A stretch of 63,971 nt of DNA, counting the filler, from Octopus bimaculoides (lineage: Eukaryota): the NCBI RefSeq assembly GCF_001194135.2. It is 6 parts of 6 records of this genome, joined end to end, with 100 filler letters (N's around TTAATTAATTAA, not from the genome) between each part and the next. Parts side by side here need not be neighbours in the genome. Positions count along the whole stretch, not along the records: positions 62,924 to 63,971 come from NW_026386580.1; 5 more parts are not named here. The stretch is one strand, 5' to 3'. Below the pieces are notes generated by a model. The model was given only the letters and a program-made list of their open reading frames with translations. It made no database searches and was not told where the DNA came from. The translations under genes were made by a program, and so were the position numbers. Shown here in pieces: positions 62,799 through 63,971 of this stretch (positions within the stretch are counted from its first letter, which is position 1; each line of letters opens with the position of its first letter).

Positions 62799-63474
62799 TA
62801 TATATGTGTGTGTGTGTGTGTGTNNNNNNNNNNNNNNNNNNNNNNNNNNNNNNNNNNNNNNNNNNNNTTAATTAATTAANNNNNNNNNNNNNNNNNNNNN
62901 NNNNNNNNNNNNNNNNNNNNNNNTATATATATATATATATATCACTCTTAAATGCATACAGTCCACAGTCTTATTGGGGGAGCGGTGTGAGCTGATACGG
63001 CGTATTTACACCAGTTTAACTAAGCAACAATCTCACAAACCTCGGAGAGCCTGAAGGACTCCTAGGCTCTGCTCTTTCCTTCAGTTTCAAGCAGGAAGAA
63101 AAATTATACGCTTATATGTGTATAAAGACACGCGCACGTATGTACTTAATATGTTAATGTATGTATATATTCACATATTCATGCGTATCTACCTACCCAT
63201 CTAATTATATATGTGTATATGTGCTCGCACATGTATATGTGGATATGGGTGCTTGAAGTATGCGAGTATATTCATATATGTGTTTGTTTGGTTACATAAC
63301 TACATACGATATACGCTACATGCAAATATATGTAGCTACAGACACATACATATATATATATATACATATATATACATATATATACACATATACATACATG
63401 CATATACGAACACACATGTTTATATATATATAATAAATAATAAATAATATATGTTTATATATATAGAGAGATAG

Positions 63475-63556
63475 ATAATCATAAATATATAGGGATTGAC
63501 AGTAACCTTCTCCTGGAGAAGCAGGTTACTGTCAATCCCTATATATTTATGATTAT
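63475..63556. repeat. 82-bp near-perfect palindrome
   Basis: Perfect 34-bp arms ataatcataaatatatagggattgacagtaacct (63475-63508 and 63523-63556), with an inner cttctcc/ggagaag stem. Confidence 0.95.
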
Positions 63557-63656
63557 AAATGATTTTACCGAAAAGGGTTTTTCATACTGAGCTACCCGGC
63601 AAAATTGTTAATTATTAATTTTATTACTAATTGACGATTCCCTGCCCTGCATATCT

Positions 63657-63723
<67 letters not shown>

Positions 63724-63797
63724 TACATGCATAAATGGGTACAGGATGTCGACAACGGTGCAAATAACATATTTATGGGAGCAACGGTCTTTGAAGA

Positions 63798-63859
63798 CTC
63801 ATATTGTCGTTCAATGCTCGAAATGAGGAGTAGATAGACAGCCGACAACTGATGAAGGG
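63798..63859 (+). ncRNA. Twisted-permutation hammerhead ribozyme candidate, subfamily A, most intact copy
   Basis: CTCA-TA-TTGTCG-ttcaatg-CTC-GAAA-TGAG-gagtagatagacagc-CGACAA-CTGATGA-A-GGG. All core nucleotides are present and all three stems pair. Confidence 0.75.
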
Positions 63860-63971
63860 TCGTTTCTCTGTGTTTACTTGTCCTGTTTTCCATTTTTTCT
63901 CGTTGTTTACGAATTCCACTCCATTTCCCCTCGTTTGTTTACGTATTTTATATTATTTGCATCATTGGTCA

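What the first reader, a model, noticed from the sequence alone, without database searches (positions are those of the whole stretch)
63798..63859. Intact hammerhead ribozyme candidate with a non-circular ('twisted') strand order in an octopus-type dispersed repeat
Seen: CTCA(63798-801)-TA-TTGTCG(63804-809)-7 nt-CTC-GAAA(63820-823)-TGAG-15 nt-CGACAA(63843-848)-CTGATGA(63849-855)-A-GGG. CTCA pairs with TGAG (stem III), TTGTCG with CGACAA (stem I) and CTC with GGG (stem II, one G-U). This gives a full core with a predicted cut after A63803. Established: canonical hammerheads of types I, II and III run cleavage strand, CUGANGA strand, GAAA strand in cyclic order. Here the order is cleavage, GAAA, CUGANGA, which no circular permutation can produce. 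I recall 'twisted' hammerheads being reported from the Weinberg lab in 2023; verify this, and I do not know whether cephalopod or repeat-borne examples were included. Inference: four copies in two subfamilies within 64 kb suggest a high-copy mobile RNA, possibly a Penelope-dependent non-autonomous element or a retrozyme, that self-processes with this unusual fold.
Basis: partly seen in the sequence, partly recalled or inferred. Interest (0 to 1): 0.9.

Follow-up and report, generated by a model that had tools for sequence, protein, structure and literature searches.

The report
Permuted hammerhead look-alike in a repeat
One copy of a short dispersed repeat carries every letter needed for a rearranged ("type-SGC") hammerhead self-cutting RNA, but the only other copy I could retrieve lacks two catalytic letters, so it is more likely an accident of sequence decay than a maintained ribozyme.

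Summary
Its block order (cleavage site, GAAA, CUGANGA) is the published "type-SGC" non-circular hammerhead permutation (Eckert et al., NAR 2023), not a "twisted" hammerhead. All 12 conserved core positions are present. Stems I (6 bp) and III (5 bp) are sound, and stem II is marginal. A match this good is rare per 64-kb window (at most about 8e-4). It is expected several times in a gigabase-scale genome, and about 0.5 times at one mismatch in a genome's repeat library. One relative was recovered, a Logan contig about 80% identical over the repeat with unrelated flanks. It has U4>C and G12>A, so its catalytic core is not conserved. The U of CUGA here sits where the relative has a CpG, which suggests deamination created it. 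There are no Penelope or retrozyme hallmarks: no tandem units, no reverse transcriptase, no type I hammerhead. The motif lies between inverted-repeat arms flanked by microsatellites. Verdict: most likely a fortuitous look-alike in a decaying repeat. A cleavage assay and a genome-wide census of copies remain decisive.

The parts
63798..63809 (+). Block S: stem III 3' strand CUCA plus U16.1 (63802), cleavage-site nucleotide A17 (63803), and stem I 5' strand UUGUCG
63810..63815 (+). Linker from stem I to stem II. It is 6-7 nt; the published type-SGC ribozymes typically have about 3 nt.
63816..63827 (+). Block G: stem II 3' strand (G)CUC, G12-A13-A14-A15.1 (63820-23), and stem III 5' strand UGAG
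63828..63842 (+). Linker from stem III to stem I. It is purine-rich and resembles the GATA microsatellite. Positions 63828-35 and 63838-41 can pair with 63868-79 as a candidate fourth helix.
63843..63860 (+). Block C: stem I 3' strand CGACAA, CUGAUGA (63849-55), one inserted A (63856), and stem II 5' strand GGG(U)
63868..63879 (+). 3' strand of the candidate fourth helix (CUGU-GUUUACUU). It lies 7 nt after stem II.
63769..63971 (+). Stretch of the repeat shared with Logan contig L008. The gap-free core is about 80% identical. The copies differ by one unit of about 31 nt, and their flanks are unrelated.
63725..63786 (.). Left inverted-repeat arm. It is homologous to the reverse complement of the right flank of the L008 copy.
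63930..63971 (.). Start of the right inverted-repeat arm. It is cut off by the end of the piece.
63863..63947 (+). Three degenerate tandem units of about 32 nt (TTTCTC..GTTTAC..). The L008 copy has one unit fewer.
63657..63723 (.). (ATAG)17 microsatellite that abuts the left arm

Best explanation
This is a fortuitous hammerhead look-alike. One copy of a short repeat, AT-rich, flanked by microsatellites and carrying inverted-repeat arms, happens to hold all hammerhead core nucleotides and three complementary segments in the S-G-C order. Selection does not maintain it as a ribozyme. The likely history (inference) is that the ancestral repeat read CCGA(U/G)GA at the C block, one letter short of the core. 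A CpG-to-TpG transition in this copy then produced CUGAUGA. If the strand is transcribed, most molecules should fold into the nested hairpins that sequester blocks S, G and C. A minority might adopt the type-SGC fold and cut after A63803 by ordinary hammerhead chemistry, with G12 as general base, giving a 2',3'-cyclic phosphate and a 5'-OH. That would be an accident without a biological role, comparable to the single-sequence GCS-1 case of Eckert et al.
For: 1. The only relative found is L008, which is 79.9% identical over 139 gap-free positions. It has U4 (63850) T>C and G12 (63820) G>A, that is 2 of 12 conserved core positions changed (17%). The rest of the alignment differs at 16-22% (the same was first inferred from codons). 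2. At 63850 the relative reads CCG and this copy reads CTG, which is the signature of CpG decay in this copy. 3. Stem II is marginal: GGGU/GCUC at -1.5 kcal/mol, against -4.8 to -8.6 kcal/mol in the validated SGC-1, SGC-2 and SGC-3. 4. The stem I to stem II linker is 6-7 nt rather than about 3. A 7-nt spacer separates stem II from the candidate fourth helix, where the published ribozymes have about 1 nt. 5. The fourth helix is not better than composition-preserving shuffles (p=0.16), and two of its pairs are broken in L008. 6. Nested folds of the region are no more stable than shuffles (z -0.18 and +0.30) and they tie up blocks S, G and C. 7. Sequences one core mismatch away from a match this good occur at 1.2e-7 per nt. 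That is about 0.5 expected in a 2-Mb repeat library and about 630 in a 2.7-Gb genome, so a repeat family one CpG decay away from the motif is not surprising. 8. There are no retrozyme or Penelope hallmarks. 9. Eckert et al. searched all of RefSeq for type-SGC with a covariation filter, and I found no eukaryotic genomic family reported in the sections and supplement passages I read.
Against: An exact match of this quality is rare per window: at most about 8e-4 per 64 kb, with 0 hits in 478 Mb. The single extra nucleotide between A9 and G10.1 is in the same place as in nearly all published type-SGC ribozymes, although it is A here and U there. [quoted passage not shown] All four differences from L008 that fall in stems I-III keep the pairs: two are C-G to U-G, and one is a double change from C-G to U-A. 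My rough estimate is that this happens by chance with p about 0.05-0.1. One decayed relative says little about whether this copy is active. The direction of change at 63850 rests on CpG logic alone, for which I estimate a likelihood ratio of only about 2-3.
Confidence: 0.62

Rival explanations
1. This is a genuine type-SGC hammerhead carried by a dispersed element with inverted-repeat arms. This copy is active, or was recently, and L008 is simply a dead copy. The RNA cuts itself after A63803, with the fourth helix (63828-41 with 63868-79) holding stems I and II together.
For: The core is complete and all three stems are in the correct register. The window-level chance rate is at most about 8e-4. 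The 1-nt insertion after A9 matches the published type-SGC ribozymes. A fourth helix can be drawn. Stems I-III stay pair-compatible in L008, including one compensatory pair, 63817/63859. Hammerheads are common in metazoan repeats.
Against: There is no conservation of the core in the only relative. Stem II is very weak and the spacers are longer than in the validated examples. The fourth helix is not significant and is not conserved. I found no eukaryotic type-SGC family reported in the parts of Eckert et al. I read, although they searched all of RefSeq. There is no evidence of transcription.
Confidence: 0.2
2. The RNA is catalytically competent only between molecules or in tandem copies. Blocks from two copies or two molecules would rebuild a canonical S-C-G (type III) junction, as minimal Penelope hammerheads do when they act as dimers.
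For: In principle, S and C of one unit plus G of another would give a nested three-way junction. The weak stem II and long linkers argue against a compact monomer.
Against: There is only one CUGANGA and one usable GAAA in the piece, and no tandem duplication of the unit. The upstream CGACAAC 7-mer is at chance level. L008 also carries a single unit.
Confidence: 0.05
3. The conserved pairings belong to another structured or hairpin RNA made from the inverted-repeat element, for example a foldback or MITE-derived hairpin transcript. The hammerhead letters would then be incidental.
For: Inverted-repeat arms flank the centre. The helices are pair-compatible in both copies while catalytic letters are not conserved.
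Against: Nested folding of the centre is not better than shuffles. L008 lacks a clear left arm. There are only two sequences, so the apparent conservation of pairing is weak.
Confidence: 0.08

Closest known systems
Type-SGC hammerhead ribozymes (HRIMA-1 motif and type-SGC variants; Eckert, Friedrich, Weinberg and Weinberg, NAR 2023, PMC10085705)
   Same: The 5'-to-3' block order is the same: cleavage-site block, GAAA block, CUGANGA block. The conserved core nucleotides are the same. Stem III is 5 bp including A15.1-U16.1, and stem I is 5-6 bp. One extra nucleotide sits between A9 and G10.1. A helix between the stem III-to-I linker and the 3' tail can be drawn.
   Different: The published examples (583) come from metatranscriptomes and viroid-like RNAs and show covariation and cleavage. 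Here the sequence is genomic repeat DNA with one relative, and that relative lacks U4 and G12. Stem II is 3-4 bp with wobbles instead of 5 Watson-Crick pairs. The stem I to stem II linker is 6-7 nt instead of about 3 nt. The inserted nucleotide is A, not U. A 7-nt spacer precedes the fourth helix. The invariant HRIMA-1 stem I (AUGUU/AACAU) is absent.
GCS-1, the single-sequence type-GCS candidate from Caballeronia peredens (same paper)
   Same: It is also a lone descriptor match with a full core and no covariation support, so its biological relevance is unclear even if it cleaves.
   Different: GCS-1 was shown to cleave partially in vitro, and nothing has been tested here. It is bacterial and has a different block order.
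Hammerheads of metazoan repeats: Penelope-like elements and non-LTR retrozymes (Cervera and de la Pena 2014, 2020; Li et al. 2026 preprint)
   Same: The animal repetitive-DNA context and the association with microsatellites.
   Different: Those are canonical type I (C-G-S) hammerheads in pseudo-LTRs or in tandem units of 150-400 nt. Here the order is S-G-C, the unit is single, there is no tandem array and no reverse transcriptase nearby.
Foldback or MITE-like elements with inverted-repeat arms
   Same: Arms of about 60 nt in inverted orientation surround a centre of about 146 nt. The element is AT-rich and abuts microsatellites.
   Different: Element ends and target-site duplications could not be defined. 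The second copy lacks a clear left arm. Copy number is unknown.

Membership tests
Type-SGC hammerhead ribozyme | Blocks in the order S (cleavage site), G (GAAA), C (CUGANGA) on one strand | tested here: met
   This is the only solution in the piece, and it is on the + strand.
Type-SGC hammerhead ribozyme | All conserved core nucleotides: C3 U4 G5 A6 G8 A9, G12 A13 A14, A15.1-U16.1, H17 | tested here: met
   CUGAUGA is at 63849-55, GAAA at 63820-23, U63802 and A63803.
Type-SGC hammerhead ribozyme | Stems I and III directly adjoin the core blocks | tested here: met
   Stem I is 6 Watson-Crick bp (-5.5 kcal/mol). Stem III is 5 bp (-3.1 kcal/mol). Both are similar to SGC-1, SGC-2 and SGC-3.
Type-SGC hammerhead ribozyme | Stable stem II starting with G10.1-C11.1 (5 Watson-Crick bp in the published examples) | tested here: inconclusive
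   G10.1-C11.1 is present after a 1-nt insertion. The helix is only GGG(U)/(G)CUC with 1-2 wobbles, at -1.5 kcal/mol against -4.8 to -8.6 kcal/mol.
Type-SGC hammerhead ribozyme | [quoted passage not shown] | tested here: inconclusive
   A 12-bp interrupted helix can be drawn at -9.4 kcal/mol. It is not significant against composition-kept shuffles (p=0.16; p=0.014 against iid sequence). It is offset by a 7-nt spacer, and 2 of its pairs are broken in L008.
Type-SGC hammerhead ribozyme | Short linker (typically about 3 nt) from stem I to stem II | tested here: not met
   The linker is 6-7 nt, UUCAAU(G). This feature is typical rather than strictly defining.
Type-SGC hammerhead ribozyme | Conservation of the core and covariation of the stems among homologues | tested here: not met
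   The only homologue has U4>C and G12>A. There is one compensatory pair, and two sequences are too few for statistics.
Type-SGC hammerhead ribozyme | Site-specific self-cleavage that a G5 mutation abolishes | not testable with these tools
   This needs in vitro transcription and mapping of the cut.
HRIMA-1 motif (the narrow family) | Invariant stem I AUGUU/AACAU and association with hairpin-ribozyme-bearing circular RNAs | tested here: not met
   Stem I here is UUGUCG/CGACAA. The context is microsatellite-flanked repeat DNA.
Canonical hammerhead types I, II and III (Rfam RF00163, RF00008, RF02275-7) | Nested three-way junction in cyclic order S-C-G | tested here: not met
   There is no Rfam hammerhead hit at E<=10. 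The descriptor finds no canonical arrangement on either strand.
Non-LTR retrozyme or Penelope-like element | Type I hammerhead in each unit of a tandem array or in a pseudo-LTR, with a reverse transcriptase / GIY-YIG ORF in autonomous copies | tested here: not met
   There is a single unit, no tandem copy, and no long ORFs in the piece or in L008.

The most novel reading that the evidence does not exclude
The repeat family is a genuine carrier of an active type-SGC hammerhead. That would be the first non-circularly permuted ribozyme encoded in an animal genome, residing in a new kind of host element: inverted-repeat arms rather than a Penelope pseudo-LTR or a retrozyme array. L008 would then be a decayed copy.
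Probability: 0.13. Interest if true: 0.8.

Novelty: not a real feature. Interest (0 to 1): 0.28.

Why it matters
If it were real, it would move non-circularly permuted hammerheads from uncultured viroid-like RNAs into animal chromosomes. It would also show that permuted ribozymes can ride on a different class of repeat, which would be useful for ribozyme evolution and for searches that currently assume circular orders. As the evidence stands, the case is mainly a caution. A full-core, three-stem descriptor match can look highly significant for one window. It is nevertheless expected by chance once whole genomes, repeat families and CpG decay are considered. Covariation or a cleavage assay is needed before a lone match is called a ribozyme.

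Tried and rejected
- Rfam cmscan at E<=10 on the piece and on L008 gave no ribozyme hit of any class. The only hits were microRNA-like matches on microsatellites and two C/D-box snoRNA matches at noise level over UGAUGA. This negative result says little, because Rfam hammerhead models are nested.
- Canonical type I, II or III readings and a minus-strand reading are rejected. There is one CUGANGA, no GAAA downstream of it, and nothing on the minus strand.
- A tandem or dimer origin is rejected. There is no internal duplication, and the upstream CGACAAC is at chance level.
- The metagenome pattern scan gave 7 hits, all unrelated in their flanks.
- Four viral scans and one scan of prokaryotic genomes gave 0 hits.
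- Exact look-up of six spurious ORFs found none in the collection.
- Three word-indexed protein searches with spurious ORFs covering the motif found nothing. P0001 shares only two 5-mers with the query, which explains why the first search missed it.
- Full-text search for the sequence strings found only unrelated primers.
- Literature searches for octopus or cephalopod hammerheads and for type-SGC outside Eckert et al. found nothing relevant.
- I considered building a covariance model from the published HRIMA-1 alignment and did not do it. Such a model cannot encode the pseudoknots, and it would mostly score the HRIMA-1-specific stem I, which is visibly different here.
- A recollection, not tested: the C block and what follows it (GACAAC-CGATG ... 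TGTGTTTAC) resemble a segment of an abundant octopus SINE that reads CCGATG. If that is right, it would support an ancestral C at the U4 position. It is a lead from memory only.
- Procedural note: the look-up of encoding contigs states that it accepts only certain proteins. I asked once with P0001, which came from the search of protein representatives, and the tool accepted it.

Full report
OBSERVATION. The piece (62924-63971, 1048 nt, 67% A+T) was read directly. Assigned by standard hammerhead numbering, the blocks are as follows.
- Block S is CUCA-U16.1-A17-UUGUCG (63798-63809).
- Block G is (G)CUC-G12A13A14A15.1-UGAG (63816-63827).
- Block C is CGACAA-C3U4G5A6U7G8A9-A-GGG(U) (63843-63860).
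Stem I has 6 Watson-Crick pairs. Stem III has 5 pairs including A15.1-U16.1. Stem II is G-C, G-U, G-C plus an optional U-G. A descriptor I wrote accepts any of the six block orders. It finds this as the only solution in the piece, on either strand, in order S-G-C. The same rules recover the published ribozymes SGC-1, SGC-2 and SGC-3.

WHAT THE ORDER CORRESPONDS TO. Eckert, Friedrich, C. Weinberg and Z. Weinberg (NAR 2023, PMC10085705) described non-circular permutations of the hammerhead. They named them by block order, and S-G-C is their "type-SGC" (HRIMA-1 motif plus variants). They report 583 predicted examples from metatranscriptomes, with covariation in all stems and experimentally mapped cleavage. 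In those RNAs stem I is joined to stem II by about 3 nt. A fourth helix joins the linker 5' of stem I's 3' strand to the tail 3' of stem II, and disrupting it abolished cleavage of SGC-3. Their supplementary alignment shows CUGAUGA-U-GGNCC in nearly every row, which means one extra nucleotide between A9 and G10.1. They searched all of RefSeq with a covariation filter, and I found no eukaryotic genomic family reported in the sections and supplement passages I read. I found no other paper that mentions type-SGC or a cephalopod hammerhead of this kind.

IS IT MORE THAN CHANCE? In composition-matched random sequence, a looser version of the descriptor gave 19 hits in 220 Mb. That version requires stem I of at least 5 bp, stem III of at least 4+1 bp and stem II of at least 3 bp. 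This is 0.011 per 64 kb on both strands. Matches as good as the observed one gave 0 hits in 478 Mb. My analytic estimate from the stepwise frequencies is about 3e-9 per nt. That corresponds to about 4e-4 per window and about 17 per 2.7-Gb genome. Matches with the same stems but one core mismatch occur at 1.2e-7 per nt (30 in 258 Mb). That is about 630 per genome of that size and about 0.5 per 2 Mb of repeat consensus. The motif is therefore striking for a single window. A repeat family that sits one mutation away from a full motif is, however, an expected occurrence at genome scale. Once such a family exists, its copies will show "intact" motifs wherever that one mutation happens.

ANATOMY COMPARED WITH VALIDATED TYPE-SGC RIBOZYMES. 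Stems I and III are comparable in length and energy to the validated examples. Stem II is much weaker, at -1.5 kcal/mol against -4.8 to -8.6 kcal/mol. The stem I to stem II linker is 6-7 nt rather than 0-3 nt. The inserted nucleotide after A9 is A instead of U, but it is in the same place. A fourth helix with the right topology can be drawn: 63828-35 and 63838-41 pair with 63868-79 (12 bp, 3 G-U pairs, a 2-nt bulge, -9.4 kcal/mol). A purine-rich linker facing a pyrimidine-rich tail gives such a duplex in 16% of composition-preserving shuffles, and in 1.4% of iid sequences. The helix also starts 7 nt after stem II rather than 1 nt. Nested folding of 63790-63870 and of 63740-63900 is no better than shuffles (z -0.18 and +0.30). 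The nested minimum-energy structures sequester blocks S, G and C in local hairpins. Validated type-SGC ribozymes also have competing nested folds, so this point is weak.

RELATIVES. DNA pattern scans of the metagenome, viral and prokaryotic collections returned only chance hits or nothing. The source is evidently a eukaryote absent from those collections, so I used spurious open frames that cover the motif as protein queries. Three word-indexed searches failed. A full HMMER scan of 1.84 billion representatives with the 72-residue minus-strand frame found one real relative. This is P0001: 85 aa, E 8e-8, 62% identity, from a Logan assembly, and a singleton cluster. Codon logic alone already forced 17 nucleotide differences in 132 positions, including U4>C and G12>A. 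The look-up of encoding contigs then returned the contig, L008 (SRR11869394_2933549, 1238 nt).

TWO-COPY COMPARISON. The stretch 63769-63907 aligns without gaps to L008 (reverse strand) 956-1094 at 79.9% identity. Farther downstream the copies differ by one unit of a tandem repeat of about 32 nt. The flanks are otherwise unrelated, so these are dispersed paralogous copies and not one locus.
- Core. L008 reads CCGAGGA instead of CUGAUGA (U4>C; the N7 change is harmless). It reads AAAA instead of GAAA (G12>A). Both U4 and G12 are among the positions that established hammerhead mutagenesis and crystallography show to be essential, with G12 acting as the general base. So 2 of the 12 conserved positions differ (17%), no fewer than in the surroundings (16-22%).
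- CpG sites. Both core differences lie at CpG sites. At 63850 the CpG is in L008 and this copy has TpG. At 63819/20 the CpG is here and L008 has CpA. By the usual asymmetry of CpG decay, the ancestor more likely read CCGA...CGAAA, that is without U4. This is an inference, and I estimate a likelihood ratio of only about 2-3.
- Stems I-III. All four differences keep the pairs. Positions 63798 and 63800 change C-G to U-G, and 63817 with 63859 change C-G to U-A. Most of these are C>T changes opposite G, which preserve pairing automatically, so I rate this as weak evidence (roughly p 0.05-0.1).
- Fourth helix. One pair improves and two are broken.

CONTEXT. The left flank 63725-63786 is homologous to the reverse complement of L008's right flank (score 28 against a null of 8.4 +/- 1.4). 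Positions 63930-63960 match the start of that same flank. This copy therefore has inverted-repeat arms around a centre of about 146 nt that holds the motif, and the right arm is cut off by the end of the piece. L008 has no clear left arm. (ATAG)17 abuts the left arm, and the stem III to stem I linker (TAGATAGACAG) itself looks like microsatellite. There is no tandem repetition of the unit, no second CUGANGA, no type I hammerhead and no reverse-transcriptase-like ORF in either contig. The Penelope or retrozyme suggestion therefore has no support.

INTERPRETATION. The best-supported reading (confidence about 0.6) is a fortuitous look-alike. The repeat was one letter short of a full S-G-C hammerhead constellation, and this copy acquired the missing U by CpG decay. 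Nothing indicates selection for catalysis. I would not exclude that the RNA cleaves weakly in vitro. My subjective estimate is about 0.3, given how tolerant hammerhead cores are and the precedent of GCS-1. That alone would not make it a biological ribozyme.
The main rival (about 0.2) is a real type-SGC ribozyme family of which L008 is a dead copy. In its favour are the low per-window chance rate, the shared insertion position and the pair-preserving changes. Two minor rivals are a dimer or trans-acting arrangement and an unrelated structured hairpin RNA from the inverted-repeat element.

MEMBERSHIP AND NOVELTY. At the descriptor level the sequence meets the order, the core and the stem I and III criteria of type-SGC. 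It is inconclusive for stem II and the fourth helix. It fails the typical linker length, the conservation and covariation criterion and the HRIMA-1-specific stem I. Cleavage is untestable here. I therefore do not file it as a member. If it proved active and conserved, it would be a new member of a known kind (type-SGC) in a new host context. As the evidence stands I classify it as not a real functional feature.

LIMITS. Only one relative could be retrieved, and a decayed copy says little about whether this copy is active. Copy number, the family consensus and the species are unknown. The decisive tests are a genome-wide census of copies with covariation statistics and a cleavage assay with a G5 mutant control.

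Noticed in passing
window 63475-63556: An 82-nt near-perfect hairpin: 40-nt arms, 95% complementary, 2-nt spacer. The RNA minimum free energy is -54.2 kcal/mol, with z -12.7 against shuffles. It could be a foldback or MITE-like insertion or a hairpin-RNA locus. It is not present in L008, and there was no exact match in viral contigs.
   Followed up: partly
window 63725-63786 and 63930-63971; L008 (reverse strand) 1087-1170: The hammerhead-like centre is flanked by inverted-repeat arms in this copy. The left arm equals the reverse complement of the right flank of the L008 copy. The right arm is cut off by the end of the piece. L008 lacks a clear left arm.
   Followed up: partly
window 63863-63947: Three degenerate tandem units of about 32 nt (TTTCTC..GTTTAC..). 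The L008 copy has one unit fewer, a difference of 31 nt.
   Followed up: partly
window 63657-63723 and 63831-63841: An (ATAG)17 microsatellite lies upstream. The linker inside the candidate (TAGATAGACAG) is a near-copy of it, so part of the 'ribozyme' is microsatellite-like sequence.
   Followed up: partly
window 63123-63430 and 63819-63873; L008 29-127: There are sub-threshold Rfam hits: mir-297, mir-466 and mir-1277 on TA/CA-rich low-complexity DNA, and the C/D-box snoRNA models sR14 and sR17 over UGAUGA (E about 2). All are far below gathering scores, and I take them as composition artefacts.
   Followed up: no
L008 (Logan SRR11869394_2933549), whole contig: The about 950 nt on the side of the repeat that corresponds to our upstream side has no similarity to this piece beyond microsatellites. 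It has no ORF above 60 aa. The species of the run could not be looked up with the tools.
   Followed up: no
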